Below, piece after piece: positions 2,550 through 63,164 of a stretch of DNA of 64,000 nt. How positions within the stretch are numbered: the stretch's first letter is position 1; the number at the start of each line of letters is the position of its first letter. The translations under genes were made by a program, and so were the position numbers. The notes under the pieces are model-generated. The model saw only the letters and a program-made list of their open reading frames with translations, searched no databases and was not told the origin of the DNA. The DNA is taken from positions 121,582,001 to 121,646,000 of the forward strand of contig NC_042997.1 of NCBI RefSeq assembly GCF_006345805.1. The letters are read 5' to 3'. The stretch is from Octopus sinensis. Lineage: Eukaryota.

Positions 2550-2584
<35 letters not shown>

Positions 2585-2591
<7 letters not shown>

Positions 2592-2955
2592 ACGACGGGC
2601 TTCTTTCAGTTTCTGTCTACTAAATCCACTCACAAGGCTTTGGTCGACCATAGGCTATAGCAGAAGACACTTGCCCAAGGTGGCCACACTGTGGGACTGA
2701 ACTCGGAACCATGTTATTGGTAAGAAAACTACTTACCACACAGCCACACCTGCACCTATATATATACACATATATAATATATACGACGGGCTTCTTTCAG
2801 TTTCTGTCTACTAAATCCACTCACAAGGCTTTGGTCGACCATAGGCTATAGCAGAAGACACTTGCCCAAGGTGCCACACTGTGGGACTGAACTCGGAACC
2901 ATGTTATTGGTAAGAAAACTACTTACCACACAGCCACACCTGCACCTATATATAT
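2585..2955 (-). mobile_element. SINE family A 5' half (tRNA head + CORE-like box), tandemly duplicated
   Basis: Two near-identical ~190 bp units with an A-box (tggctgtgtggt), a B-box (gagttcagtcc) and caccttgggcaagtg. Confidence 0.85.
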
Positions 2956-3364
2956 ACACATATATAAATATATACATAAATATATATGTGTGTATTTGCA
3001 TCAATGCATGTGTGTATATAGGTGTGTGAATGTTTGTGTGCTTAATGTGTATATTTACGTATTAAACTATATTTACACCAGTAACTTTTGCTAGACTTTA
3101 ATAAACGCCCTAAAGCGATTATCGATAGTCTGCTATTTCGTGATGGTAATATTGAAAGAAAAAAAAAGTCATCCTTAAAATTGTTTAGAATTAGCAAAGT
3201 TTTATCAATACTCCATTTTGTAAATGTTTAAATTTACATTATTAAATGGCTATTTACGTTGTACACTACATTAATATCGTTATTTTGGATAATTATCTCT
3301 GAAAGCTTGATTTGGTTTTATATTCTTAAGAGAAACTTGTCCGTATTTAAATGTGTACCTAATA

Positions 3365-13058: not shown

Positions 13059-13096
13059 GGCGCTGGAGTGGCTGTGTGGTAAGTAGCTTGCTAACC
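13059..13096 (+). mobile_element. SINE A head, 5' part (A-box), cut by the LINE
   Basis: ggcgctggagtggctgtgtggtaagtagcttgctaacc; resumes at 18561. Confidence 0.9.
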
Positions 13097-13485
13097 TCAC
13101 TGACTGAAGAGTGACTTTGCTTACTGTACTACGGTTTGGACGCGTTTTCTTCCCGGTAAGAATTTTGCTGTGTTGTTAATTGTTGAATTTCTACTACTGA
13201 AAACTTGTCTTTAAACGTTGCTGAACTGTCTTGTTCTCCGGTTTTACCGGGGAATAATTGGATAATTTCTTACCGTTGAACTGTTAGCCATTGTGGCTTT
13301 TTATTTACGTGACTATACATAGTCCTGCCAGACTATTTTCGTGCCCCTCCCCCGAATGGGGGTGGGAATTGGAATTTTTGAACTGCTTTTTTGAACTACT
13401 TTGGAAGAAAAACTTTCTATAGGTTTCCCAGTTTTGTGGGAAACCAATATTCGTAATTTTTGTGTTGTTTAATTTCAACAGAATA

Positions 13486-14904
13486 ATGTCTGTTGAAATT
13501 ATTCACGAAAGTAGTGCTCTTGAGGAGAGCAATGTTAAAAAATTTTCTGCAGTAGCCGCAGTGGCCACTGAGAACATTGACATCGATGTCAATCAGCTCG
13601 TCGAGCTATTTAAAAGAATGCAAGAGGAGGGTGGTGATGTTAAAATATCACCCTCCGCCAGTATCGTGGAGACCGAGAAGCGGACCGTAGTGTTTAAAAC
13701 TTTCTGTCCACAAAGCAGAAGGTTCAAACACTTTGAAAAAAGCACCATCGAGAAATGCCTGTCCCCGATTTGGAAGGACATCGTGTACGTCGCCAGGGGA
13801 CGGGCATATGGCACTGTGGATGTCCGCTTCTCGGGGGAAGAAATGGCCCGCGGGCATTCTGTGAACCCCCTAAAAACCAAGGAGGTGGTACTTTTCCCAA
13901 GCTATAGGGGACGCAGGACGTCCCGGGTCAGGATTGTAGAAGCCCGCCGCCGGAAGTAGATCCGGTAGAGGTAGTGGCCGCCCTGTTATATAAAAGGGCG
14001 GACAAAATAAAAATACTAGAAGTAACATGCTCTACCCCTCTATTTTGGCTCGGGCGTAACATTAATATATTAATTCAAGGAACAGCGGAGGACCTGCAGC
14101 TCCTTCCTGAGAGGGTGCTCGTGGGCGAGAACGTAGCCCTCAGGGTACAGGTCGAAGGCCGAAAACCCACCTGTTACGCCTGCGGCAAAAAGGGCCACAT
14201 TCGTGTAGACTGTCCAGACAAGCAAAAGAAACCGCAGACACCAGGCCCCTCAGATAATAAAAAAGTCCCTACCCTTGCAAACACACCTACCCCTACAAAA
14301 ACAAAAAAATCCCACTCCTGCTGTTACGGTGCCAACCCCAAAACAGACTGAAGAAAAAATCCAGCCCTCGCACTCACAAATCCCTACACTATTAAAACCT
14401 CCCACCCCCCTAAAAACTGCGGCGCCTACCGAACAAACTATTACTACCCAGCCCTCGCACTCACAAACCCCTACACTATTAAAACCTCCCACCCCCCTAA
14501 AAACTGCGGCGCCTACCGAACAAACTATTGCTACCCCAGACGATACCATGGAGGTATCAGAGGGGGGATTTACACCAGTTCGTAAAAGAATTCGTGCAGC
14601 ATCCCCGTCCACATCCCCTACAAAAAATAATAAAAACAAAGACACACCACAGACACGGAAAAAAAAATCCCGCTCAACTAGCCCAGAAAAAGAAGACAAA
14701 AAAGAAAATGAACTCATATTAATTGAATTCGACACACAAGACAAATACATAAACGATATTGTGGTTCAGCATCAGTCAGCAAGACTGTACAACAAATACA
14801 AAGATCGAAATAGACACGCGTGGATTGCGGAAACAACGTTCAAACAATTAAAAGACAGACACCAAACGCCATCCGGCATATCGCGAACTTGCCGGACTAT
14901 CTGA
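13486..14904 (+). pseudogene. LINE ORF1 (gag-like), frameshifted
   Basis: Three successive frames; zinc knuckle CYACGKKGHIRVDC; Pro/Thr/Lys-rich C-terminal half. Frameshifts near 13945 and ~14300. Confidence 0.85.
14361..14535 (+). repeat. 87-bp tandem repeat (2 copies) in ORF1
   Basis: QPSHSQ(I/T)PTLLKPPTPLKTAAPTEQTI(T/A)T occurs twice, offset by 87 nt. Confidence 0.9.
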
Positions 14905-14995
14905 AGAAAGAGGAGAAAGAAGGGGCCCACAAACGTGTGGTGAGGTCGGCCCCCACCTCTCCAACGAAATGTAAGTAGAACTTTTACTTTTTGTA

Positions 14996-17900
14996 ATGGC
15001 TTCGCTTAACCTTGGTTGTTTAAATGTGCGTGGTCTGAGTTCGAAGTGGAAGCAGGCTTGTTTCCTCGACGACCTCAGATCACATGATATACATGTGATG
15101 GTTGCTACAGAGACCAAGCTGGACAGCCTACAAACCTTCTCGCCTCTCCTGAATGGCTACGAGAAAATCATGTCTCCTGGCCAGACCGGAGGGCGAGGGG
15201 GCGTAGTGGTACTGATCCGTAAAGACTTGGCTCTACAGACAAGTACAGTCTATGTAGACCCAGAAGGTGGGCTGGTCGTCCTTGATGTAACATACAGCAG
15301 TAAGGCCTTCAGGTTGATCGGACTCTATGCACCTTGTGCTAGAGGTTCCCAAACTGATTTTTATCGGCGCCTAGAGGGCTTTCTCGTGACGTCGAAGACT
15401 TTAGTGATATTAGGGGACTTTAATGCTATCGTTGACGTACACATCGATAGCGTTGGCTCGATCTATAGGAAAGTGAACTCACGTCTCGTGGATCTGCTTA
15501 AGCGGTTTCAGCTAGCAGATCGTTACAGACTTGACCATCCGAACGTCCCAGAGAGATAAGTCTAGTTTTAGTTGTCCACAGCTCGTCCAGGTGCCCTATA
15601 CTGACCATAGAATGGTCACGTGTAGACTGGACATAGATAGCACACTTAAGATAGGAACCGGCTACTGGAAGCTGAACAAGTCTATTTTGACACGCGAGGC
15701 ATACCGTAGCCGGATTAAGGTGTTAGTGCAGAGGGCGTTAACCGGAGCCGTGGTTAATGACCGGTGGTGGTTCACCCTCAAAAGAGCCATTCGATTCGAG
15801 TCCATTAGATTTAGTAAACAACTAAGACTAGATAGGGCTAGAATAGAAGGGCAACTAGTTAAGAACTTAGAAGAGGCGTTGAGGTTGGGCTCTGCATCTC
15901 ACATTTTAGCGGCGAGAACGGCATTAGACCGTCACCTCAAAACCAAACATGAGGGATGTAGAGTCCGGGCTAAAGTACGAGCATTGGGCCGTGAGGGAAT
16001 TAATGTTGCCGGATGGGCCCGTACGATAGAAACACAGCGTGGAAACGATGCCACAATTGGGTCTCTTGTTGATGAAAACGGATGCACGATCAAGAAGCGG
16101 GACGAGATGTGTGAGGCACTTCACAAGCACTTCGCCGAGTTGTTCGGGAGGTGCGGGACGCTGGATCATGGTGAGGCCCTTAGGGACTTCCTGTCTGGTG
16201 GCCCGCGCCTCTCGACACGAGAGACTGAGTGCTGTGAAGGGCCAATCACAGCCGAGGAAGTAATCGAGGTGTTGGGCAAGTGCCCCGGGGAGAAGTCGCC
16301 GGGTCTCGATGGTCTGCCCTATGAATTTTATAGAAGTATGCCAGACTTGTTCGGGCACCTGCTGGCTAGCGTCTACGCCAACTGGCAGCAGAATGGGAGA
16401 ATTCCCAAGTCTGCGAGCCGGGGGGCGGTGACGTTGATCAGGAAGGACCCGAACAATGGGGAGGAGATAGGGAACTTCAGGCCCATAACTCTGTTAAACA
16501 CAGAGTTAAAGATTCTGGCCAAGGTGCTAGCAAAAAGGTTGGCGCGGGTCGTGGACAAACTTGTCGGGGAAGCGCAAACGTGCGCTATCCCCGGCAGAAC
16601 GATCCACGACAATCTCCACCTTATACGCTACTCCTTAGAGAGGGTGGGGAAGCTTTCTGGCGCAGGGGGAGCACTGGTACATTTAGACCAGTCTAAAGCA
16701 TTTTATAGGGTCGACCATCGGTACCTGGCGGCGGTCCTCGGAGAGGCTGGCCTAGGCCCGACCTATCGAGGTTGGATCGCTGCTTTGTATAGCGACATCG
16801 AGTCTGTAGTCAAGGTGAACGGTTCCTTTTCGAAGCCGTTCAGGATCGAGCGTTCAGTTCGTCAAGGGTGTCCCCTGTCCTCGCTCCTATACGTATTGGC
16901 TCTTGAGCCTTTGCTGCGGAAGTTGGAGGCACTAGGGGGCGCGCCGCATGATCTATGGTGTGGAAGAGGAGCTACGGCGTATGCTGATGACACCTCCATC
17001 ATCGTGGCAGACGAAGGCCAGCTTCCAGTGGTGGAAGAGGCCATCAAAAGCTACGAGGCGGTGGCAGGAGCAAAGGTTAACAAGGACAAGTCGGTCGGTT
17101 TGCAACTCGGCACCTGGAGGGGCAAGCCGATGCCGTCCAATAACGTCGTAGGGCGTTGGACGGAAGGTCCTGTTAAGCTGCTCGGAGTCTGGTTCGGGCC
17201 AGACCTCCAGATTGAGAAAAATTGGAGTGAGGTGGCCAACAAGGTGACCGCTCTAACTCAGACCTGGTCTGGGCGGGTGTTATCCCTGCTAGGGAAGGCG
17301 GAGTTGGTGCAGATGTTTATAGCATCAGTAATCACCTACCGTCTGACCGTGGTGCCTTGCCCCGATTTGTGGCTGAACAAGTTGGAGAGAATCCTTTTCC
17401 GATTTTTGTGGAAAGGAGGAAAGCCACTTGTAAAGCGCTCTGTCTGCTGCCAGAAACCGCTAAAGGGTGAGCTAGGGATGCCTTGGCTGAGGATGCGAAA
17501 ACTCGCGTTAAGGTTGAGGCACCTCTGGCTTTACCTGGATGGAGAGCAGGTGTGGTCGCCGCACGTCCGGTTCTACCTTCCCCAGTTAACATCCCTAACG
17601 GACATCGGTGCATGGATCAAGCGGAGACCTAAACTGAGTGAATGGCATTTGGAGTGCCGTCAGGCGCTCCAGCTACTATCTCGGGTGGGCAACGCCGGCA
17701 ACAGGAGTTCCACCACGGATTTCTATAGCGGGTTAGTGGAGATTAAGTCCGAAGACGCCTTGGGGGAGACCCTGGGCTACGATGAAAATCAGTTGGTCAA
17801 CCTGTTCTGGAGGACGTTCGGGCTGGGGTATCTGGATAATTACCAGAAATCCCTGGCCTGGCAGTGTTTCCGTGCGGCTTTACCTGTTCGCGACAAGCTG

Positions 17901-18332
17901 TCAAGGCACGGTAGTACCGTCTCGCCGACATGTCCGCGATGTGAGCAGGATAGGGAGACCGTCTTGCACGCATTCGTGGAGTGTCCGGAGTTATCGGGAC
18001 TGATAGCTTTTGTTGAACAACTGTTGTCAGTGATGGGAAGAGTACAGCTATCAGCTGAGTCTATCATCGAGATTGTGCCGCCCCCTTTCCTTAACAGGGA
18101 AAGAAAGGCTTGTTTTTTCTGTGTAGTAGCCATACTGAAAGAAACAGTATGGAAGACGCGTACGAAAGATATAGTGACAGGCACCTTTGTCTCCGGCCAG
18201 GGGTTGATTAACTTTTTTAGTTACCACCTCAGTAGCAAAATCAGGCTGGAGAAGAGGTGTCTGTCACGAGATATGTTTGTGAAAAGATGGAAGCCTGTGG
18301 CATACAAGATGGGTATGTTTGGCACCAGGTAA
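14996..18332 (+). pseudogene. LINE ORF2 (APE endonuclease - RT - CCHC), disrupted near 15550
   Basis: LNVRGL, LGDFN, TDHRMV; SPGLDG, FRPITLLN, QSKAF(Y)RVDH, RQGCPLS, YADD, LLGVWF; CPRC..ETVLHAFVEC. The frame changes between the 187 aa and 933 aa ORFs. Confidence 0.92.
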
Positions 18333-18560
18333 GTGTGACCGGATCAGAAAGTAAAGGTTCTACCCGGATGGCCGGATGTCCGTCCTTCGACATGATCATT
18401 AATATTTTTAAACATTGCCTTCATAAAATTCATTGTTTATAATCTTATCCGTAATTTCATTCGAAAATTGTAACTGTGTTAAGCTACTTCACCCTTTATA
18501 TTTGTCTGTCCTTGTTTGTCCCCTCTTTGTAAATGCCTAAATGGCAAATTATATGAAATA

Positions 18561-18722
18561 AAGTAGCTTGCTAACCAACCACATGGTTCCGGGTTCAGTC
18601 CCACTGCGTGGCATCTTGGGCAAGTGTCTTCTACTATAGCCCCGGGCCGACCAATGCCTTGTGAGTGGATTTGGTAGACGGAAACTGAAAGAAGCGTGTC
18701 GTATATATGTATATATGTATGT

Positions 18723-23744: not shown

Positions 23745-23781
<37 letters not shown>

Positions 23782-23783
23782 CA

Positions 23784-24344
23784 TTGAGTGAGAGAGCAGT
23801 GCATGCTATCAAAGTGACAGTGGGGTAAAATATACGAAGCCCAGTATACCCATCATGACTACCCGTCTGATAAGGGTACACTAGACACATGCATCACAAC
23901 CATATGTGCCCGACATGGTGATTTCATATCAAAATAAACAGCGCATGACCTTGCTTGCTGGTGGGACCCAGTTAGAATTTTCTTCTGGTCGAGTAGCCCA
24001 TCCCGCTCAAAAGGTCCCTGAATAAGGATTGTTTAAGGATGTTGAACGAACCACCCATGTTTCCAAAGGTGAATTATCTAAACCTCCAAGAATTCCTTTC
24101 AACACACGGCTATGATGCTCTCCCACTACTTCTGCTTGTGATCAGAGATGCACATATCCTCAGCCACTAAAGGACATACTCAACTGGTTAAGGTCAAACA
24201 ACTGACAAGCAAATCTGTGGTATTGAGCAGAATATTTGCTGTAGCCCGTCTTTTATACCAAGACAAAACAATGTGCATGATAACACTTTCAATCAATTGA
24301 GATCAGAAGCCACGAGAGCCACTGCCTGGTACTGCATCAGGACA
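23784..24344 (-). mobile_element. ~560-bp non-coding element in (TAA)n, copy 1
   Basis: Reverse complement of 40560-41108; (TTA)n on both sides. Confidence 0.8.
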
Positions 24345-25249: not shown

Positions 25250-26200
25250 TGTTGGCATTCCGTCGGTTACGGTGATGAGTCGTTCCAGTTGATCTGATCA
25301 AAGGAACAGCCTGCACGTGAATTTATCATGGAAATGACTGGGCAATCCCACAGACACGCATGTACTTAACGTAATTCTCAGGGAGATGCAACGTAACACC
25401 GAGTGTGACTAGGCTGTCCCTTTGAAATATAGGTACTACTCATTCTTATTTCTTTATTGCCCACAAGGGGCTAAACATTAAGGGGACAAACAAGAACAGA
25501 CAAAAGGGATTAAGTCGATTACATCGACCCCAGTGCGTAACTAGTACTTAATTTATCGACCCCGAAAGGATGAAAGACAAAGTCGACCTCGGGGAATTTG
25601 AACTCAGAACGTAACGGCAGACGAAATACCTATTTCTTTACTACCCACAAGGGGCTAAACACAGAGGGGACAAACAAGGACAGACAAAGGGGTTAAGTCG
25701 ATTACATCGACTCCAGTGCGTAACTGCTACTTAATTTATCGACCCCGAGAGGATGAAGACAAAGTCGACCTCGGGGAATTTGAACTCAGAACGTAACGGC
25801 AGACGAAATACCTATTTCTTTACTACCCACAAGGGGCTAAACACAGAGGGGACAAACAAGGACAGACAAAGGGGTTAAGTCGATTACATCGACTCCAGTG
25901 CGTAACTGCTACTTAATTTATCGACCCCGAGAGGATGAAAGACAAAGTCGACCTCGGCGGAATTTGAACTCAAAACGTAACGGCAGACGAAATACCGCTA
26001 TGCATTTCGCCCGTCGTGCTAACGCTTTTGCCAGCTCACCGCCTTAAATCATTCTGCTCATTCTTGCCAGCTGAGTGGACTCGAGCATCATGAGATAAAG
26101 TGTCTTGCTCAAGGACAAAGCGCGCCGCCGGGAATCGAACGTACGACCATACAATTATGAGCCGAATACCTTAACCACTTAGCCACGCGCTTTCACACCT
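25250..26200 (-). mobile_element. SINE family C (tRNA head at ~26110-26195 + CORE-like box), interrupted by a SINE B trimer
   Basis: Minus strand gtggctaagtggttaagg...gttcgattcccgg...gtccttgagcaagacact; TSD ctcattctt at 25439-25447 and 26057-26065. Confidence 0.75.
25448..26046 (-). mobile_element. Nin/Deu-domain SINE (B2) trimer: one head + three ~182-bp units
   Basis: Nin-like tttcatcctttcggggtcgataaattaagtac; tail tttgtctgtccttgtttgtcccctct...aaagaaata; junctions at 25630/31 and 25812/13. Confidence 0.9.
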
Positions 26201-34774: not shown

Positions 34775-36049
34775 ATACATACATACATATGTATGTATAT
34801 ATATATATATATATATGTACATATATATATATATACACATTATTGTTACGTTTTCACATCATATATACATACATACCTATGTATCTCTGTCTGTGTATGG
34901 ATAGAGATATAAACTGAGAGATAGGTGGAATAGATAGATAGAGAATGAGAGAGAGAGAGCGAAAGAGAAAGAGAAGGACGTAGAAAGACGTACACTGGTT
35001 TCAATACAGGATGTCATGTAAACATTTGTAGCTCTATATTGAAAATATATCATTCTGAGATAGACAGCTGAGGTAATTGTAGTTTGAATTCATAAGCATG
35101 CTTAGACACCTCTGATCTGTCTGCAACAGAAATGAGTGAATTTCCAATATATAAAAGGCATCACGTTTTCACACTGCCACTTCTTAGACTAAACTTCCAC
35201 AACGTTCACATCAATTTTTGAAATGTTTTATAAGAGCTCAATCAATATTTTCGCATGATCAAAATTTTAGCCGGCGGTTTTAGTTCAACTCTTAAATAGA
35301 TTACGTGTTGGTTTCTTTTTTCTGTCTTTCTTGCTTTTTTTTTTACAAGATACAGGTCTGTGAACAAACTTCACTATAGAAACATCACCCAAGATGATAA
35401 TATACCATGGCAGTTTTTTTTTTCAAATATTGTAATATTATTCTGAATCAAATTAAATATTCTTTTCAAAGCATGTTTAGAAAAACAGAAAGAAAAAACA
35501 TAACAAGGATTATTTTGGTGTAATTAAACAGTAGCTTCAAGACGGTGAGCTCGCGGAATAGTCAGCACGTCGAACAAAAGTATATAGAAAAGTATGTATG
35601 TATGTACATACTTTTGTAAGTCCTGAGCTCAAATCCCATCGCGGTCAACTGCAGTTTTTTCTTTCGGTGTGTGTGTGTGTGTGGAAGTTCAATAAAATAA
35701 AATACCTGTTAAGTACTTGGGTCTACGGAATCGATTTTTCCCTCCTCCTTATTCGTTTTATCCTACAACGGGTAAGCGTTTGTAAGAAAAAGACGTTTGT
35801 GTTACAATATATTTCAGACAGCAGGGCCATGAATTTTTATTCGTTGTTAAGAGTTCTCATATTCCACATTGATATTGATCATACTGGGATTGTAACATTT
35901 ATTTATATTACTGATGCGAAGATCCAACCTGAGAGTAAACTAAAAAGATCATATTGAACACCTAACAAAGGTATTTTCCAATAGAACATATCTAGGGTAT
36001 ACATTATTTACATTTGATGGATATTTGTCCTCATTTTGTTTGTTGCTAA

Positions 36050-41108: not shown

Positions 41109-41344
41109 TAATGAGGAGGCTGTTGTGGATGGTTCAGTTTGGGATAGCGCATGTCCGCGCGTCACCAACGAACTTATCGAAATACTGCTAAGCATTCGTC
41201 CGGCGTGCTAACGATTCTGCCAGTTCGACGCCTTAATAACAATCATGATTTCCTTGATTTCCCACTAGGGCGACGGATGAAGGGGACAATACAACGACAG
41301 GCATAAAATATGAGGATTTACATGCAATGAAATGATATATTATA

Positions 41345-41822: not shown

Positions 41823-43770
41823 CAGGGGTTCACCAAACATTTTGCACGTCGGGCTGTATAACTGTGAGAATGATGTGCGAGGGCCGCATAGCCATTTTGT
41901 TCAATACTGTACAATGAATACACAAAAAATAAAGACAAACCAACATATCTATTTAAAGAAAAGTTATCAAGGATGGTGACGTCAGCAATGAAATATTTAT
42001 ATCACGCCCAGTGCACACATATCCGAATCTCACAAACTAAGTAGCAAAAAGAGTTTGATGAGATTTGTGGAACTGGTGTTTAGCTTTTAGAATATTGAAG
42101 GCGGCGAGCTGGCAGAATCGTTAGCGCGGAGAGCGAAATGCTTGATGATATTTCGTCTGTCTTTAATTTCTGAGTTCAAATTCCACCGAGGTCGACTTTG
42201 CCTTTCATCCTTTCGGGGTCGATTAAATAAGTACCAGTTACGCACTGGGGTCGATATAATCGACTTAATCTGTTTGTATGTCCTTGTTTGTCCTCTCTGT
42301 GTGTAGCCCCTTGTGGGTAGTAAAGAAATAGGTATTTCATCTGTCTTTACGTTCTGAGTTCAAATTCCGCCGAGGTCGACTTTACCTTTCATCCTTTCGG
42401 GGTTGATTAAATAAGTACCAGTTACGCACTGGGGTCGATGTAATCGACTTAATCCGATTGTCTGTCCTTGTTTGTCCTCCCTGTGTTTAGCCCCTTGTGG
42501 GTAGTAAAGAAATAGGTATTTCGTCTGCCGCTACGTTCTGAGTTCAAATTCTGCAGAGGTCGACTTTGCCTTTCATCCTTTCGGGGTCGATTAAATAAGT
42601 ACCAGTTACGCACTGGGGTCGATATAATCGACTTAATCCGTTTGTCTGTCCTTGTTTGTCCCCTTAATGTTTAGCCCCTTGTGGTCAATAAAGAAAAAAG
42701 AATATCCTCAATATTTGTTTTGGAGTTGCTGCATTCAATCAAGAGAATCCCTTTCAAATGTTCATCAGTCAACTTCTTTCCATGTGCTGACTTCACATAC
42801 TTCATCTTGAAAGTGTTTTTCTCACTGTCATAAGTTGTTCCAAACACTGATGCCATACCAGAGGCAAATTTCTTCAACTTTGAAAACTCATCATCAGGTA
42901 AGCAGCGATAAAATTCTACAAGATTCCTTCTCTGTGTAATATCATTCAAGAAGTCATTTTGCTGGCAAATCAATGAGCACCAACTGTAGTTCAACTGGCA
43001 CGGCATCAAGGTTACACTCAAACGGATTCTGGAACAGAATAAATTCTATCGAGATCTTAAAATCTCTCAAAAAAACTCGAGGTTTACATCTTCTGCGAGT
43101 TCAGCACGAATCTCTTTGAAACACTGAAAATGAGAGATTTCCTTCTTCCATTTGTGCTTCAAACACTGATAGCTTTCTTCGAAATCCTTTGATGATTCTG
43201 TAGAGATCACAAATAAGGTTATCCTTTTCCTGAAGTTTCAAGTTCAATTCATTCATTTGGGACGTGATGTCAACCAAAAAACGACAATTTTGACAGCCAA
43301 GTAGAATGTGACAGAAATGAATCAACTCTATCCTTTTCAGTGAAAAATATATCTATTCATCTATGGAGCTTATTAAAACGCAACAGGACTTTACCCCTGC
43401 TGAGAAACTTTATTGCTGTGTGATAATGCAAGTCACAAAGTTCAGAATCAATTTTTTCAAGAAAAGCCCAGAACCATCGGTGATTAAATGCATAGATCCC
43501 CAATGAAGTTTACTGCCGAAGCGACTGGTTTCACTACACAAGAAATATCTAATTCTTTCCCATAAAGTACTTGTTGATGTATAATGCAGTGTATAAACAG
43601 GGCGCCCTGGAGTTGAATATCTTCCAGCGTAGTCCTAGTCTGACCCACCAGACCCTGCCTTACCCCAACCATGTTTTTTCCTCCATCAACTGTAACAGAA
43701 CGAATCTGATTCCACTGTAGCCTTGTAAAGTTTTCTGCACTTCAATGAAAATGTCTTCCCCAGCTGGAAG
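41823..43770 (-). mobile_element. hAT (Buster/SPIN/Charlie-like) transposon remnant
   Basis: TIR-like caggggttcaccaaac at 41823; MVG..GLVG, HCIIHQQVL, FLVDITSQMNELNLKLQ, FGTTY..KMKYVKS..LTDEHL, ending ..ILKAKHQFHKSH. Confidence 0.8.
42099..42700 (+). mobile_element. Nin/Deu-domain SINE B2 trimer
   Basis: Head + three units; junctions gaaata|ggtatt at 42330/31 and 42514/15; 7-bp TSD agaatat at 42089-42095 and 42699-42705. Confidence 0.9.
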
Positions 43771-44404: not shown

Positions 44405-44411
44405 TTTTTTT

Positions 44412-44935
44412 TTGGTATAAAAGATGGGCTACAGCAAATATTCTGCTCAGTACCATTGTCTTGGTATAAAAAGATGGGCTAGAGCAAATATTCTGCTCAA
44501 TACCACAGATTTGCTTGTCAGTTGTTTGACCTTAACCAGTTGAGCATGTTCCTTAGTGGCTTAGGATATGTGGATCTCTGATCACGAGCAGAAGTACTGG
44601 GGGAGCATCATAGCCATGTGTTGAGAGGGATTCTTTGGGATTTGGATAATTCACCTCTGGAAATATGGGTGTTTCGTTCAACATCTTTAAACAACTTTTA
44701 TCCAGGGACATTTTGAGCGTAATGGGTTACTCGACCAGAAGAAATTTCTAACTGGGCCCCACCTGCAAGGTCATGTGCTGTTTATCTTGATATGAGATCA
44801 CCATGTCGCGCACATATGGTTGAGATGCATGTGTCTAATGTACCCTTATCAGACGGGTAGTCATGATGGGTATACTGGGCTTCGTATATTTTATCCCAGT
44901 GTCACTTTGATAGCATGCACTGCTCTCTCACTCAA
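44412..44935 (+). mobile_element. (TAA)n-embedded element, copy 3 (truncated)
   Basis: Colinear with 40640-41108; ends ctcactcaa-taatgataat. Confidence 0.8.
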
Positions 44936-45373
44936 TAATGATAATAATGATGATGATGATGATGATGATAATAATAATAATAATGATAAAGATAATATTA
45001 ATGATAATAATAATAGTAATAATAATGATAATAATATTATTTCTTTTGTTTACCACCACGTTGAAAGAAGAAAAAGAAGGAGAAGGAGGAGGAGGAGAGG
45101 AAGAAGAAGGTGGATGAAGAAGAAGAAGAAAAAGAAAAAAGAGGAGGAGGCCGATGGAGGATGGAGGAGGAGGAACAACTATGATAAGAAGAGGAGATGG
45201 AAGAGAAAGTGGAGGAAGGAGAAGGAGGAGAAGGAGGTAGAGGGAGGAGGAGGAAAAAGAAGAAGAGTCAATTAAGTGAGAGTAAAGATGAATGGAATTA
45301 ATGACTGTTATTGATAATAATGATGATATCTAGCAATATTGTCAGTAGAATAAACATAAAGATAACAAGAAAC

Positions 45374-49439: not shown

Positions 49440-49795
49440 ATATTGGCTTTAAATTTTGGCACAAGCTATGGGAAGAGCATAAGTCGATTAATCGATCCCG
49501 AATAGTAAAGTAGATCTGGGCAAAATTTGAACTCAGAACATAAAGACGGACGGAATACCTATTTCTTTACTACCCACAAGGGGCTAAACATAGAGAGGAC
49601 AAACAAGGACAGACAAACGGATTAAGTCGATTACATCGACCCCAGTGCGTAACTGGTACTTAATTTATCGACCCCGAAAGGATGAAAGGCAAAGTCGACC
49701 TCGGCGGAATTTGAACTCAAAACGTAACGGCAGACGAAATACCGTTAAGCGTTTTGCTCAATGAGCTAATGATTCTGTCTGCTCGCCGTCTTAAA
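49440..49795 (-). mobile_element. Nin SINE composite: old head + young B2 unit + B1-type remainder
   Basis: Junction gaaata|ggtattcc at 49559/60; the remainder ends cttgtgccaaaatttaaagccaata. Confidence 0.85.
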
Positions 49796-49880
49796 AGAAT
49801 AGTAGAAATATTGGTTTCAAATTATGGCATAGAGTACGAACTGTCGGTTCTGTTTTCTCGTGAGTATTGCCGTACCAATG

Positions 49881-50440
49881 TACGAGGGTGAGTAAAAAAG
49901 TAATGCTATTTTGTTTAGGACAGATATAATTTCCAACACAGGAACATGTATCATACATCAAAAGGAAGCTAGTCCTCTGTGAATCACATCCCTACTTCTC
50001 CAAATAGTCACCGTTTCTCTCAATAGCAATGTTCCACCTTCGAATGAGAGCATGCATCACTGCCCCGTATAGTTCTGTTGACTGTTCTTTGAGCTACTTC
50101 TTCACTACCTCCACACTCACCAGATTTAGCGCCTTCAGACTATCATCTCTTCGGTGCCACGTAAAAGGGACTGAGAGGCAAACATTATTCTAGTGACGAA
50201 GAAGTGAAAACTTTAATGAAGAATTGACTCAAAGAACAGTAAACATAATTCTACGGGACAGTGATACATGCACTCATTCGAAGTTGTAACATTGCTATTG
50301 AGAGAAACAGTGACTATGTTGAGAAGTAGGGATATAATCCACAGAGATCCAGCATCATTTTGATGTATGAGACATGTTCCTGTGTTGGTAATTATACTTG
50401 TCCTAAACAAAATGGCATTATTTTTTGACTCACCCTCGTA
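49881..50440. mobile_element. Fold-back mariner derivative with two 3' ends (213-bp arms)
   Basis: tacgagggtgag... / ...ctcaccctcgta; centre encodes PPHSPDLAPSDYHLF. Confidence 0.85.
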
Positions 50441-50599
50441 ACATGTCATGTTACTGCAACACCAACAATATCAATAAGCTGCGCAATGTCGATAACAAAA
50501 CGGCTGACAACTTTACCATTTAGTACATTTTATAGTGAATATTTTTTACTCTTCTTCCAAATAAATTTCTCTTTCTGAAATCTTTAAACCTCTAGAAGC

Positions 50600-50780
50600 A
50601 AGGTATTGGTTTCAAATTTTGGAACAAGGCCTGTCGATTACATCGACCCCAGTTTTCAACTGTTACTCCGAAACAATGAAATGCAAAGTCAACCTCGGCG
50701 GAATTTGAAATCAGAACGTAAAGGCGGACGAAACGCCGCTAGGCATTTTACCCGGCATGCTAACGATTCTGCCAGCTCTT
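50600..50780 (-). mobile_element. Nin SINE, B1 type
   Basis: Head gagctggcagaatcgttagc; tail ccaaaatttgaaaccaata. Confidence 0.75.
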
Positions 50781-52454
50781 CTTCCCTTAAAATATACAAG
50801 CACTATTGATTATATTTTTTGTGACAAGACGACGGTCTGGAAAGGAAGAGGTAATATCAGCTAAATAAACCCGGTATTACTGATATTTATATTTACTACC
50901 TTCAGTGATAAATGTCAATGTTAACCACAGCAGGATTTGAAATTAGAAATTAGAAAGTCGGAACTAAATCCGGAAATAGATTTACCTCCTACTATCGAAT
51001 GATTCTGAGAGCTCGCAGTTGTATAGACTCCGAATATATTAATTGGAATTCAGTGTTTGATTTAATAGAAAATAGTATTATTTTTGGTGATAATAGTATT
51101 AAGATGATATATATATATTTTAATGTCCTCTATTAGTTTTTTTCCCTTTCTACTAGCTTGGTAGAAGAAAGCTGCATTGTTAAAATAGATGGCTAGGCAA
51201 TCATTGATAAATAATGTATCTATACACAGTATTATGATGAATGAAGGTTATATAGAAAAAGAAATGGGAGAAGTTCGTTGAAAAGTATGGTTAAACTGAA
51301 CGAAGATGTTTAAATGGTTGAAGAGTAGGAAACGTGAGAGAACGAGATGAACAAGAAAAATGAGGGTGATTTAGAAACATATTTAGCTAAGAGGGAAGAA
51401 AAATGAGATGCGATAACAAGCGTGGAATCGAATGAACAAGAACCGAAAGATGGTTAGTTTGAAACGGTAGAAAGAGAGTAGTGTGATAGTGGGGAGATGG
51501 TTGAGAGAGAGAAGGAGAGAGAGATAGAGAGAAGGAGAGAGAGATAGAGAGAAGGAGAGAGAGATAGAGAGAGCGAGAGAGAATTATAAGAGTGAAAACA
51601 GTCAGAAATAGAGTAAAGTTAAATGTAAAAGCATGAAGAGGAGAAATAATGACTCGAAGAAATGATTTAACGATACGGAGATGTTAGAAGTGAGGAAGGA
51701 AATAGCACAAAATAAGTAAGAGATGAATGTTCAGAGATTGAAAGATAATGAGAGAAAAATAAAGAGAAGGTAGAGAGAGGGAGAGAGAGAGAAAGAGAGA
51801 AGGATGGTGATGGAGACAGAGAATGGAATATTGAAGAATAGTAGAATAGCTGAGGAGAGTCATAGTAAACACTGTTATTATGTTCTGTTTTATTCTCTGA
51901 ATTCAGACCTAATGGTTGCAGAATGATGTGAATAATATGAAAACCATTTCAACAGCATTACGGATATATAATGACAGCATTAAATGAAATAAAATGAAAT
52001 AAAACGGAAAAGAAAAGATTCAAAAAATGGCAAAGAAACAAAACAAATGAAACAAAATCTCGTTGAATGAAACACAATACATTAATGATGCTACAATCCA
52101 TACATCACATTTTGATATATGTCCAACTACGCACCGTATATGTTTAGTAATAATGCTGCATGGATAATATTGCTCGATCAGAAGATTTGTGAATTATATG
52201 TTATGTTACATGTTATTTAGCGCTGACACACTTGTGAGTGAAAATGGTTCAATGACAACCCAGTAACAGCAAATGAGTAAAGTCTATATATGAGTATTTT
52301 AGTGTGTATGTAGAAATAAAGAGAGTATGTGGAATTCAAGTATGAAGAAATAATTGTAGTCGCAGATCTGTTCTAAATGGAGGTTCAGTTAAAATAAAGA
52401 GGTTGACAATGATATGAGGTATCTCTTTGGCACAATTGTTTAATAATAATGTAA

Positions 52455-52929: not shown

Positions 52930-53121
52930 TCATTAGTAATTATTCCTTTCTACTTTGGGCAGAAGGTCTGAGATTTGGTGGAGAAAAGAAGACGCTGACG
53001 TCAATTACATCGACCCCAGTGTTTCAACGACTCCCCGAAAGGATGAAAGGCCAAGTTGACGGCAGCGGAATTTGAACTCAGAACATAAAGATAGACGAAA
53101 TGTATTTGGTTATCACATACA

Positions 53122-53993
53122 TATTGCGGGGTCTTTTTTTATACTTCTTTTATTTTTCAAAATTAAGGTAAACATAATTATTTTTTAATCTAAAATATAC
53201 CCTCCTTAATTTTCTACAATGCACTACCATCTCTCTGGTAGACTTGCAAAACACCTCTTCCAAAATTCACTTGTCCGTGACGAAAAATACACCGTCAGTA
53301 TTGTCCTGGCCTCGTCCAAAGAATTCATATTTTTTTCTGTCAAAAAGATTTTGAAGACTGCAGAATAAATAATAATCAGATGGAGTAATGTCCGGCGAAT
53401 ATGTTGGGTGGGTGATCGTTTCCCATTCAAACTGCCCTAGCATGCCATCCTCGCTGTATGTGGCCGAGCATTATCCTGATGGAAAAACATCTTTCGTCTT
53501 GAAACCAAAGATGGTCGTTTTTCTTCAAGAGCTGACTTGAATGATTGGTTGAATGACCAAATCCAAGCTTTTTCCGCAACAGTTACGATGAGATTTTGTT
53601 CCATCAGAGTTTGCAGGATCCCCTTATCGAGCTCTACAAATCTTCCAGGACGAGGATCATCATCTAGGCTGAAGTTTCCGGCTCGGAATTTCTGAAGCCA
53701 CCAATAACACTGGCTTACGCTTATTGTCCAATCCCCATATATTGCATTAATATTCCTCGCACTTTCCGTTGCGTTGTTGCCTTTATTGAACTCATCAAGC
53801 AAAATATGTCGAAAATGTTCCTTTGTCACTTCCATTATAGCTTTGAAAAATAACTGTTAAAATCGAATTGCACTCTTCAAAACTTGCACTAAGAATAAGT
53901 ACAAGGAAACATTACTACCTGTTTATTCCATCCCCCTCCAACTTTTAGTTCATGCAATTGAAAAAACCGCATTATTTATGGGATGGCTCAATA
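53122..53993 (-). mobile_element. Mariner transposon remnant, internally deleted
   Basis: MEVTKEHFRHILL..KFRAGNFSLDDDPRPGR..HQDNARPHTAR; TIR aaaaaaccgcattatttatgggatggctcaata. Confidence 0.85.
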
Positions 53994-54522
53994 TTTGTCT
54001 GACGTACTAACGATTTAGCCAATTTCAATCCCTTATAAATATTGCAAAACATTACAGATATTTATTGTGCTGGTCCATATTCCGCTTTTATAATCTGTAA
54101 ATGATGAGGGGAATGTTCGCTGTTGAAAAAATATATCTTGGTTTTCGGACAATTACTGAGACGAGGAAAATATGTTTCCATTCTTCGTGACAGGATAGTC
54201 AATGATGTCGATACAAAGGAATTCCTTTGGAATCGAAATCGAGGAAATTGTCAATGACAATTTAAATCCAAAACATGCAAATATTTTTTTAATGAAACGG
54301 TCCACCTTAGCTTTTTAATTGTTTCAGTCATTAGATTGTGATCATGCTGGGGCACCGTCGTGAAGAACTTTATTTGAATGAATTGACACAGTACTTATTT
54401 TTCCAGAGCCTGGTCTTCACTCTATTGGTCACTTTTGCCGAATCGCTAAGTTACGGGTAATTAAATACGCCAACAGCGGTTGTCAGGCGGTGGTGGACAA
54501 CACAGACACACACGCACGCACA

Positions 54523-60510: not shown

Positions 60511-60526
60511 CGTATCTACACTATTT

Positions 60527-60761
60527 TTATTTCTTTATTACCCACAAGGGGCTAAACACAGAGAGGACAAACAAGGACAGACAAACGGATTACGTCGATT
60601 ATATTGACCCCAGTGCGTAACTGGTACTTATTTAATCGACCCCGAAAGGATGAAAAGCAAAGTCGACCTCAGCTGAATTTGAATTCAGAACGTAGCGGCA
60701 GAGGAAATTCTGTTAAGCATTTCGCCCGGCCCGCTAACGTTTCTGCCAACTCGCCGCCTTT
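60527..60761 (-). mobile_element. Monomeric full-length Nin SINE B2
   Basis: 12-bp TSD tctacactattt at 60515-60526 and 60762-60773. Confidence 0.88.
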
Positions 60762-61087
60762 TCTACACTATTTCCTTATCTCGTTGTTCATGTGATAGCA
60801 GAGAACAAAAGTATAAAAAGAGAAGAGAATTAATAAATATTTCACGAGGATTTTTATGATTTTGCTTTTAAAACTTGAGACTTTTGAATCAGTACTTCTG
60901 TTTTTCTCCTTGTCTGTCTAGTTTTGTTTCTCGTTTTTCGTGTAAAGTGTTATCTTCTAACTTCTTGGCGCAAAGTGTTATCCACTCTAAAGTAACTTCT
61001 TTGCATCTTGTTCGCTGATCTTAAACTTATTCAGTGACAGTTCATTATAGAATTGTAAACATGTGCTTCTCGTTCTTTCTTGATAGT

Positions 61088-62450: not shown

Positions 62451-62739
62451 GAGTATCTACAGAAAAAAAGTACTAAATCGGTTTGATCAGGATGACCTAG
62501 GCTATAAAAAAACTACAGATCGACACGCATTGATTTCTGAGTTCATCACCCACAGCTGTCTGCCAGACTCGATAAAATAATACTCGTCAGTTTAACAAAA
62601 ATATACAGGCTAAGTACTGCGGTACTATACCACAGACCTCAAATGCTTAGCCGTGTTCATCTATTGATAACTATACATATGGAGCAGTCATGGTGAGGCT
62701 GTAATCTGACGGAATCGTTTACGCACAAGGTTAAAAAAT

Positions 62740-62920
62740 AAAATGCTTAGCAGTACTTCGCCCGTCTTTACGTACTGAGTTCAAATTCCGCTAGTGTTGA
62801 CTTTACCTTTTATCATTTTAGGGTCGATAAAATTCGTACCAGTTGGTTACAGGAGTCAACGTAACCCTTACTCCTTTTCCCCGAAATTGCTGGTCTGGTA
62901 CCAAAATTTGAAACCAATAT
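62740..62920 (+). mobile_element. Nin SINE B1, diverged
   Basis: gagttcaaattcc...gtcgataaaa...ccaaaatttgaaaccaata. Confidence 0.7.
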
Positions 62921-63164
62921 GAGTAACTCAGTGGAGTAGGAATAACGTCAAACTCATGATTAAATGTTTCTCATCATATTTCTTTCAGTCTGGAATGCAT
63001 AGGAGGAGGTTTAAAAATAATGGTTAATTAGGCGGAAAGCGAAGGTATGTGACACTTTACACTCATTTGAGGCTGATGGGAGTGGGAGGGAGGTATTATC
63101 AAACCAGGGACAAGGCTGGAAGATTGCTATAGAGTGAACTGTATTAGAGATAGATAGATAAAGG

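What the first reader, a model, noticed from the sequence alone, without database searches (positions are those of the whole stretch)
49440..49795. Key locus: a young B2 unit inserted at the fixed site of a different (B1) SINE
The minus strand reads a diverged head (..aaacgcttaac), then a near-consensus 184-bp unit from ggtatttcgtctgccgttacg to the tail gaaata. After that comes ggtattccgtccgtctttatg..., a decayed B1-type body ending gtgccaaaatttaaagccaata. Simple tandem duplication cannot give a different downstream subfamily. This fits target-primed insertion at ^ggtatt with a homology-joined, seamless 5' end, so that repeated rounds build arrays. It would be a SINE that homes into SINE heads using Tx1 machinery.
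Basis: partly seen in the sequence, partly recalled or inferred. Interest (0 to 1): 0.75.

Follow-up and report, generated by a model that had tools for sequence, protein, structure and literature searches.

The report
Young SINE unit inside old SINE
In a repeat-rich, cephalopod-like genome, one fresh 184-base repeat unit of a retrotransposed element (a SINE) sits exactly in register between the decayed front and decayed body of an older, related SINE; this is a real and rather rare event, but the evidence points to copying guided by sequence similarity more than to a new "homing" enzyme.

Summary
On the minus strand, 49792-49441 reads: a 49-nt SINE head with 13/49 differences and 2 of 7 CpGs left; a 184-bp B2 unit with 3/184 differences, no locus-private variant and 12/12 CpGs; then a decayed B1-type body and tail. 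The head-versus-unit contrast gives p = 1.3e-7. The tail|ggtatt junction is the same as the four internal junctions of two 3-unit B2 arrays in the window.

B2 is a LINE-dependent SINE: one head followed by 1-3 headless 184-bp units. Its tail matches the 3' end of an L1-clade LINE at 13097-18561. That LINE and three B2 elements sit at four unrelated sites with 7-15 bp duplications, so the machinery is not ggtatt-specific.

Three results argue against repeated fresh insertions:
- The locus unit carries the marker of internal array units (G at column 175).
- Array unit A2 is a chimera of its two neighbours.
- Markers recombine between units.

I favour a break at the head/body boundary repaired in register from a multi-unit B2 template (confidence 0.45). 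Homing at GGTATT remains possible (0.25). It rests on a single locus, and no further same-species sequence could be fetched.

The parts
49744..49792 (-). Old SINE head (aagacggcgagcagacagaatcattagctcattgagcaaaacgcttaac). It belongs to the resident B1-type element.
   Evidence: 13/49 differences and 2/7 CpGs kept. nhmmer aligns model positions 1-233 to 49792-49560.
49560..49743 (-). Young B2 unit of 184 bp, from ggtatttcg to gtagtaaagaaata. It is of the internal-unit type (G at alignment column 175).
   Evidence: 3/184 differences, 0 locus-private variants, 12/12 CpGs.
49441..49559 (-). Old B1-type body and tail of the resident SINE, from ggtattccgtccg to gccaaaatttaaagccaata, with an internal deletion.
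   Evidence: 12/60 differences in the shared region. Tail 19-mer matches the B1 tails. Alignment.
49554..49568 (-). Junction aaagaaata|ggtatt between the young unit and the old body. It is identical to the array-internal junctions.
   Evidence: exact matches only at 25625, 25807, 42322, 42506 and 49554.
49809..49880 (-). Separate B1-type 3' fragment ending ccataatttgaaaccaata, 16 bp upstream of the old head.
25447..26045 (-). B2 array A: head 26045-25997, then units A1 (25996-25813), A2 (25812-25631) and A3 (25630-25447). One pair of target-site duplications (AGAATGA) at 26049-26055 and 25440-25446.
42098..42698 (+). B2 array B: head 42098-42146, then units B1 (42147-42330), B2 (42331-42514) and B3 (42515-42698). 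Target-site duplication AGAATAT at 42089-42095 and 42699-42705.
60528..60760 (-). Monomeric B2 (head plus one unit). Target-site duplication AAATAGTGTAGA at 60762-60773 and 60515-60526.
13097..18561 (+). L1-clade LINE with endonuclease, reverse transcriptase and zf-RVT domains; its reading frames are broken. Its 3' end matches the B2 tail, so it is the likely partner of B2. It is inserted in another SINE, with target-site duplication AGTAGCTTGCTAACC at 13082-13096 and 18562-18576.
50598..50789 (-). Full-length B1-type SINE used as reference: same head, tail ccaaaatttgaaaccaata.
62696..62921 (+). Second full-length B1-type SINE used as reference.

Best explanation
B2 is a LINE-dependent SINE built from one 49-nt promoter-like head followed by one to three copies of a 184-bp unit. 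The unit carries the B-box-like motif, a conserved core and a tail taken from an L1-clade LINE.

At 49.5 kb an old B1-type SINE, which shares the head and the first ~120 nt with B2, broke at its head/body boundary (positions 49-55). This boundary lies just 3' of the apex of a predicted hairpin between the head and the start of the body. The break was repaired in register from a multi-unit B2 template, and this added exactly one unit together with the template's internal tail|ggtatt junction.

Base-pairing between the broken old SINE and the template set the register. The template could have been a B2 array, copied by synthesis-dependent strand annealing. It could also have been a multi-unit B2 transcript, reverse-transcribed from the broken SINE end.

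Shown: a young unit inside an old SINE; exact register; a junction identical to the array junctions; the internal-unit marker; the LINE partner; its unrelated insertion sites.

Inferred: where the break fell, what the template was, and that no ggtatt-specific endonuclease was involved.
For: - Age contrast: head 13/49 differences versus unit 3/184, p = 1.3e-7. CpGs kept: 2/7 versus 12/12. The unit has 0 private variants against 4-9 elsewhere.
- The old/young boundaries lie within -2..+6 nt of ggtatt on both sides.
- Column 175 is G in all 5 internal units, including this one, and A in all 4 real 3' termini (A3, B3, the 60.5-kb monomer, contig L002). p = 0.008 by unit and 0.029 by locus. The unit and its junction therefore look copied from inside an array, not made from an RNA 3' end.
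- Unit A2 equals the 5' part of A3 (shared 1-bp deletion at column 39) joined to the 3' part of A1 (13/13 sites). This is the product expected from unequal exchange.
- The subfamily marker at columns 78/81 and the internal/terminal markers at 152-154/173/175 occur in all four combinations, so units recombine.
- The LINE and three B2 elements sit at four different targets with A-rich duplication starts that resemble the GAAATA tail. ^GGTATT does not fit this pattern.
- The head pairs with the unit start, and ggtatt begins just 3' of the apex loop.
- Three other copies are disrupted at the same boundary.
Against: - If breaks fell anywhere in the ~170 nt shared by B1 and B2, landing within the 7-nt interval that matches the canonical unit phase has about a 4% chance. 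A site-specific nick predicts it outright.
- Zero private variants means the template was master-like. No such young array is in the window; the two arrays have 4-9 private variants per unit.
- The hairpin is only modestly better than shuffled sequence (z = -2.45), has no covariation support, and the B1 copy at 50.7 kb does not fold that way.
- The boundary hot spot was noticed after the fact.
- The A2 chimera can also arise from target-primed insertion with a long staggered cut, if the RNA came from the same lineage.
- RNA and DNA templates cannot be told apart.
- There is one locus and 64 kb of sequence.
Confidence: 0.45

Rival explanations
1. Homing by target-primed reverse transcription. 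The partner LINE's endonuclease nicks resident SINEs at ^GGTATT, and a B2 RNA is copied from its tail. The 5' end is joined by homology at the same position, so GGTATT is a 6-bp target-site duplication sandwiched between units. Repeated rounds then build arrays.
For: - The phase is exact at both junctions.
- The unit is master-like, with 0 private variants, as expected of a fresh retrocopy.
- The junction lies at the true 3' end of the element rather than at an internal point.
- B2 shares its tail with an L1-clade LINE.
- Precedent: Tx1-Mar LINEs and SINEU show a shared target preference and form tandems that sandwich a target-site duplication (PMC4494074).
- In the blood clam, TSD1-(SINE-TSD1)n arrays are known (PMC11481361).
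Against: - The four dated insertions of this machinery are at unrelated, A-rich-starting targets, and the only LINE copy is not at ggtatt.
- The primer ...AATACC-3' has no complementarity to the GAAAUA tail.
- The inserted unit carries the internal-unit marker G175, which is never seen at a real 3' terminus.
- All units of an array share that array's subfamily marker, which independent insertions do not predict.
- Membership of the Tx1 subgroup is untested.
Confidence: 0.25
2. Chance. An ordinary 5'-truncated B2 retrocopy happened to land in an old SINE at this position, and microhomology with the homologous target set the 5' end.
For: - Microhomology at the 5' junctions of L1-clade insertions is established knowledge.
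- SINEs are dense here, with about 14 B-type copies in 64 kb.
Against: - About 9 suitable sites in 64 kb, in one orientation, gives roughly 7e-5 per insertion (my estimate). With 4-5 B2 insertion events in the window the expectation is about 3e-4.
- The G175 marker is also unexpected under this model.
Confidence: 0.07
3. An old head-B2-B1 dimer already existed here, and its middle unit was later overwritten by gene conversion from a young B2 unit.
For: - Recombination between units is evident.
- A donor that is an internal unit has no homology to the left of ggtatt, which would fix the left boundary.
Against: - No other B2-B1 dimer is found among about 14 copies.
- The right boundary would still need to fall within 6 nt of the junction by chance.
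Confidence: 0.05
4. Assembly or polishing artefact. A repeat copy was corrected towards the family consensus or mis-joined.
For: A near-consensus unit with no private variants is what over-polishing would produce.
Against: - Seven other units in the same window keep 4-9 private variants each.
- The old/young boundaries coincide with the unit ends to within a few nucleotides.
Confidence: 0.05
5. The B2-B1 composite is itself an amplified family, copied here as a whole.
For: Composite and dimeric SINE families exist. This is established knowledge and is also stated in PMC10702118.
Against: - Divergence is strongly non-uniform across the three parts.
- The A-box-like motif in the head has decayed.
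- No second copy is present in the window.
Confidence: 0.03

Closest known systems
TSD1-(SINE)n-TSD1 arrays of tRNA-derived SINEs in the blood clam Scapharca broughtonii (PMC11481361)
   Same: A first element with a complete head, then repeated head-truncated elements, then a last element with a complete tail, all inside one pair of target-site duplications. This matches arrays A and B.
   Different: In the clam, internal units are also truncated in the tail. Here every unit runs to the true 3' end (…aaagaaata). A young unit placed inside an older SINE of another subfamily is not described there.
SINE-derived satellites in squamate reptiles (PMC10702118)
   Same: Tandem repeats made from part of a SINE, with a longer terminal unit that reaches the SINE terminus. 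Unequal recombination is proposed as the start.
   Different: Those arrays can reach about 1000 units and lie near telomeres. Here the arrays have 2-3 units, are dispersed, and are flanked by target-site duplications.
Target-specific Tx1 LINEs and their SINE passengers: Tx1-Mar with SINEU (PMC4494074); Keno, Kibi, Koshi (cited there)
   Same: A SINE inherits the target preference of its L1/Tx1 partner, and sequential insertions give tandems that sandwich a target-site duplication.
   Different: For SINEU-3, 90% of copies are at the target and the LINE is found there too. Here 3 of 4 B2 loci and the only LINE copy are elsewhere.
Microhomology and template jumping at the 5' junctions of L1-clade and R2 insertions (my own knowledge, not tested here)
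   Same: These explain how a cDNA can be joined seamlessly where the target and the element share sequence.
   Different: They do not explain why the 3' junction sits at ggtatt.

Membership tests
LINE-dependent (stringent-type) SINE | 3' tail shared with a partner LINE | tested here: met
   A 29/30 identical block lies at the same distance from a common GAAATA terminus. Alignment score 55 against a shuffle maximum of 27.
LINE-dependent (stringent-type) SINE | Dispersed copies flanked by target-site duplications of variable sequence | tested here: met
   Duplications of 7, 7 and 12 bp at three loci. About 14 related copies in the window.
LINE-dependent (stringent-type) SINE | Head derived from a tRNA, with A and B boxes | tested here: inconclusive
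   An A-box-like motif (TGGCAGAATCG) and a B-box-like motif (GAGTTCAAATTCC) are visible in the sequence. ARAGORN and Rfam find no tRNA, even at E = 10.
Target-specific (Tx1-type) retrotransposition or homing SINE | Most independent copies sit at one target sequence | tested here: not met
   Three duplication-flanked B2 loci sit at three unrelated targets. Only this locus is at ggtatt of a resident SINE. The sample is 64 kb.
Target-specific (Tx1-type) retrotransposition or homing SINE | Partner LINE copies inserted at the same target | tested here: not met
   The single LINE copy lies in a different SINE with duplication AGTAGCTTGCTAACC. n = 1.
Target-specific (Tx1-type) retrotransposition or homing SINE | Partner LINE belongs to the Tx1 group by reverse-transcriptase phylogeny | not testable with these tools
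   Only placement in the L1 clade is shown: human L1 ORF2p E = 5.6e-49 against R2 at 1.6e-20; Pfam RVT_1, zf-RVT and Exo_endo_phos. No Tx1 reference sequences were available.
SINE-derived tandem array (one head plus n headless units) | Head only on the first unit, with one pair of target-site duplications around the whole array | tested here: met
   Arrays A and B.
SINE-derived tandem array (one head plus n headless units) | Copy number changes by unequal exchange between units | tested here: met
   A2 is a chimera of A3 (5' part) and A1 (3' part). A long-stagger retro-insertion from the same lineage could mimic this.
Composite or dimeric SINE family amplified as a unit | Uniform divergence across parts and multiple copies of the same composite | tested here: not met
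   Head 27%, unit 1.6% and B1 part about 20% diverged. No other B2-B1 composite in the window.

The most novel reading that the evidence does not exclude
The 184-bp B2 unit integrates preferentially at the head/body boundary (^GGTATT) of resident related SINEs, across subfamilies, and regenerates its target each time. On this reading SINE heads act as landing pads and SINE-derived tandem arrays are built by retrotransposition rather than by recombination. This would be a SINE-into-SINE homing system.
Probability: 0.2. Interest if true: 0.7.

Novelty: new variant of a known kind. Interest (0 to 1): 0.42.

Why it matters
How dispersed SINEs give rise to tandem arrays, and eventually to satellites, is an open question. 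The squamate study calls it a nonrandom process of unknown cause (PMC10702118). This locus catches one unit-gain event with both junctions intact and with an age label on each part. That makes the question testable with a simple genome-wide count:
- in-phase versus out-of-phase young-in-old insertions;
- which tail variant sits at real 3' ends;
- whether partner LINE copies sit at ggtatt.

If the event was homology-guided, it shows that unit gain can cross subfamily borders. If it was homing, it would be a new target class for an L1/Tx1-type element.

Tried and rejected
Searches for more same-species sequence:
- Exact-pattern scans found nothing in viral contigs, metagenome contigs (two patterns) or GTDB genome contigs.
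- A peptide read across the unit junction found only one protein, P0121, on a 543-bp ENA metagenome contig that holds a B2 monomer.
- The LINE ORF has no exact record. Its nearest relatives are about 60% identical, one of them from Argonauta hians.
- The A. hians locus (L001) holds a related SINE with a similar tail. Its tandem there consists of two full-length copies with heads, so it did not inform this question. I first misread a BLAST hit as lying in L001; it lay in L002.

Other checks:
- tRNA identity of the head: no hit.
- Covariation in the hairpin: none of use.

Models rejected:
- One-event template switching that built the whole composite, because the three parts differ in age.
- Integration of a one-unit circle by a single crossover, because the crossover would be expected in the longest identical stretch (gttctgagttcaaatt), not at ggtatt.
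- Conversion from nearby array A, because A1 carries 6 variants that this unit lacks.

Full report
**Setting.** The window is AT-rich eukaryotic DNA full of microsatellites, SINEs, mariner remnants and one LINE. The LINE's nearest protein relatives, at about 60% identity, include one from the octopod Argonauta hians. No tRNA gene or Rfam family is present.

**The observation.** Read on the minus strand, 49792-49441 has three parts.
- A 49-nt head: aagacggcgagcagacagaatcattagctcattgagcaaaacgcttaac.
- A 184-bp unit, 49743-49560, from ggtatttcgtctgccgttacg to gtagtaaagaaata.
- A B1 part, 49559-49441, from ggtattccgtccgtctttatg to gtgccaaaatttaaagccaata.

The unit differs from the consensus of the eight units in the window at 3 of 184 positions. 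It keeps all 12 consensus CpGs. It has no variant private to this locus, whereas each of the other seven units has 4-9.

The head differs at 13 of 49 positions from a consensus of nine other heads. That is the level of old B1 copies (11 and 15); the heads of B2 elements have 6-8. It keeps 2 of 7 CpGs.

The downstream part has 12/60 differences in the region shared by both families, like other B1 copies. It also has an internal deletion and the B1-specific tail.

Head versus unit gives Fisher p = 1.3e-7. In detail: a young unit sits exactly between an old head and an old body of another subfamily.

**What B2 and B1 are.** Full-length copies of both families begin with the same head (AAGGCGGCGAGCTGGCAGAATCG...) and share about the first 120 nt after it. 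They differ in the tail.

B2 occurs in the window at three other loci:
- a monomer at 60760-60528;
- a head plus three units at 26045-25447 (array A);
- a head plus three units at 42098-42698 (array B).

The head is present once per array. Each unit runs from ggtatt, 50 nt into the element, to the true 3' end. Each whole element is flanked by one pair of target-site duplications: AGAATGA, AGAATAT and AAATAGTGTAGA.

The last 60 nt of the unit match the 3' end of a LINE at 13097-18561. A 29/30 block lies at the same distance from a common GAAATA terminus. The LINE has endonuclease, reverse transcriptase and zf-RVT domains. It is closest to human L1 ORF2p among solved structures. Its frames are broken. 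So B2 is a stringent-type SINE of an L1-clade LINE. Whether that LINE belongs to the Tx1 subgroup could not be tested.

**Is the machinery specific for ggtatt?** The LINE copy is inserted in a different SINE, with the duplication AGTAGCTTGCTAACC. The three B2 elements are at three further unrelated sites. All four duplications start with an A-rich stretch that resembles the element's own tail. This is what is expected if the nicked target strand pairs with the RNA 3' end.

The proposed nick at ^GGTATT would leave a primer ending AATACC, which cannot pair with GAAAUA (inference from the sequence). In the crocodilian Tx1-Mar/SINEU system, 90% of SINEU-3 copies and the LINEs themselves sit at the shared target (PMC4494074). 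That pattern is not seen here, although the sample is only 64 kb.

**How arrays change.**
- In array A the middle unit carries the 1-bp deletion of A3 at column 39 and the A3 state at column 24. It then carries the A1 state at all 13 later sites that distinguish A1 from A3. This is the product of an unequal exchange between A3 and A1 in an ancestral dimer. A retro-insertion with a long staggered cut could mimic it only if the RNA came from the same lineage.
- The terminal units A3 and B3 share five changes (columns 152-154, 173, 175). Every unit of array A has gataaattaag and every unit of array B has gattaaataag. All four combinations exist, so units have recombined.
- Column 175 is G in all five units that are followed by ggtatt, including the one at this locus. 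It is A in all four units at a real 3' end (A3, B3, the monomer, and the metagenome contig L002). p = 0.008 by unit and 0.029 by locus.

The unit at 49.5 kb therefore looks like an internal array unit copied together with its junction. It does not look like the 3' end of a retrotransposing RNA.

**Where the old SINE was opened.** The last old-type difference in the head is 2 nt before ggtatt. The first old-type difference after the unit is at position 7 of ggtattc. Both breakpoints therefore lie in positions 49-55.

In the B2 consensus the head pairs with the first ~40 nt of the unit as an imperfect hairpin of -41.6 kcal/mol (z = -2.45). ggtatt begins just 3' of the apex loop. The alignment fold recovers this shape but without covariation, and the B1 copy at 50.7 kb does not fold that way.

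Three other copies are disrupted at the same boundary:
- a mariner-like element of about 880 bp separates a head at about 54030-53990 from its body at 53106 onward;
- a head at 41234-41177 stops at position 58;
- a copy at 35540 has a palindromic (TATG)n expansion there.

This suggests a fragile spot, but I noticed it after the fact.

**Best reading.** A break occurred at the head/body boundary of an old B1 SINE and was repaired in register from a multi-unit B2 template, adding one unit. The absence of private variants argues for a master-like template, possibly an RNA. The G175 marker argues that the template was multi-unit.

What counts against this reading is that the break coincides with the canonical unit phase, about a 4% chance if breaks are uniform. 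A site-specific nick explains that directly.

Other readings, in brief:
- A uniformly aged composite family is excluded by the divergence contrast.
- A chance ordinary insertion is expected about 3e-4 times per window (my estimate).
- An artefact is unlikely because neighbouring units keep their private variants.

**Comparison with what is known.** Arrays with one head, headless internal units and one pair of target-site duplications are described in a bivalve (PMC11481361). SINE-derived tandem repeats are described in squamates (PMC10702118). The differences here are twofold. The junction uses the exact 3' end of the element. One unit has also entered an older SINE of another subfamily.

**Limits.** No further sequence from this species could be obtained. 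The decisive genome-wide counts remain to be done.

Noticed in passing
window 13082-18576: The L1-clade LINE is inserted inside the head region of a different SINE (family C), between that SINE's A-box-like and B-box-like motifs, with a 15-bp target-site duplication. Family C contains ccttgggcaagt, which resembles the CORE domain (from memory). The LINE has an open 933-aa reverse-transcriptase ORF, but its endonuclease domain is in another frame and its ORF1 region contains stops.
   Followed up: partly
window 52941-54030 (minus strand): A B1-like SINE is split by a mariner-like element of about 880 bp (HTH_48 domain) within about 3 nt of the same head/body boundary (position 49|50-52) where the B2 unit sits at 49.5 kb.
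   Followed up: partly
window 41177-41234 (minus strand): A head-only SINE fragment ends at position 58 (…agtatttcg). After about 63 bp comes another repeat family, which also has copies at 23780-24327 and 44405-44941.
   Followed up: partly
window 35540-35745 (plus strand): An old B-type copy in which the apex region between head and body is replaced by a palindromic (TATG)n-like stretch (aaaagtatgta...tacatactttt). A (TG)n run is inserted further on.
   Followed up: no
window 49793-49880 (minus strand): A separate B1-type 3' fragment ends 16 bp upstream of the old head. Both B1 tails here are followed by tttc. The pair aatttgaaaccaatatttc / aatttaaagccaatatttc could be a long target-site duplication, which would mean the old B1 was inserted into an existing B1 tail.
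   Followed up: no
window 49881-50440: A foldback element with 227-nt inverted arms (86% complementary) made of mariner-like end sequence lies directly next to the locus.
   Followed up: no
window 2564-2975 (minus strand): A tandem duplication (period 191, 2.2 copies) of a complete family C SINE together with its (TA)n tail. Here the head is repeated, unlike in the B2 arrays.
   Followed up: no
window 49720-49723 and 25973-25976 (minus strand): The young unit and array unit A1 share a C-to-T change that creates TTTT (acgttttgag), a possible RNA polymerase III stop inside the unit. This is awkward for an RNA template that reads through it, unless the change arose twice.
   Followed up: no
L001 14827-15323 (Argonauta hians, GCA_054771915.1): A related SINE with a similar LINE-type tail (…cccttgtgcctaatagagaaat…) but a different head forms a tandem of two full-length copies with a period of 250 bp.
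   Followed up: partly
L002 (ENA metagenome scaffold, 543 bp): A metagenome contig holds a B2 monomer 89% identical to the window consensus, next to a family C SINE. This is probably host or prey cephalopod DNA in that sample.
   Followed up: no
window 14361-14536: An 87-bp tandem repeat (2 copies, 97% match) lies in the proline/threonine-rich stretch between the ORF1-like and endonuclease parts of the LINE.
   Followed up: no
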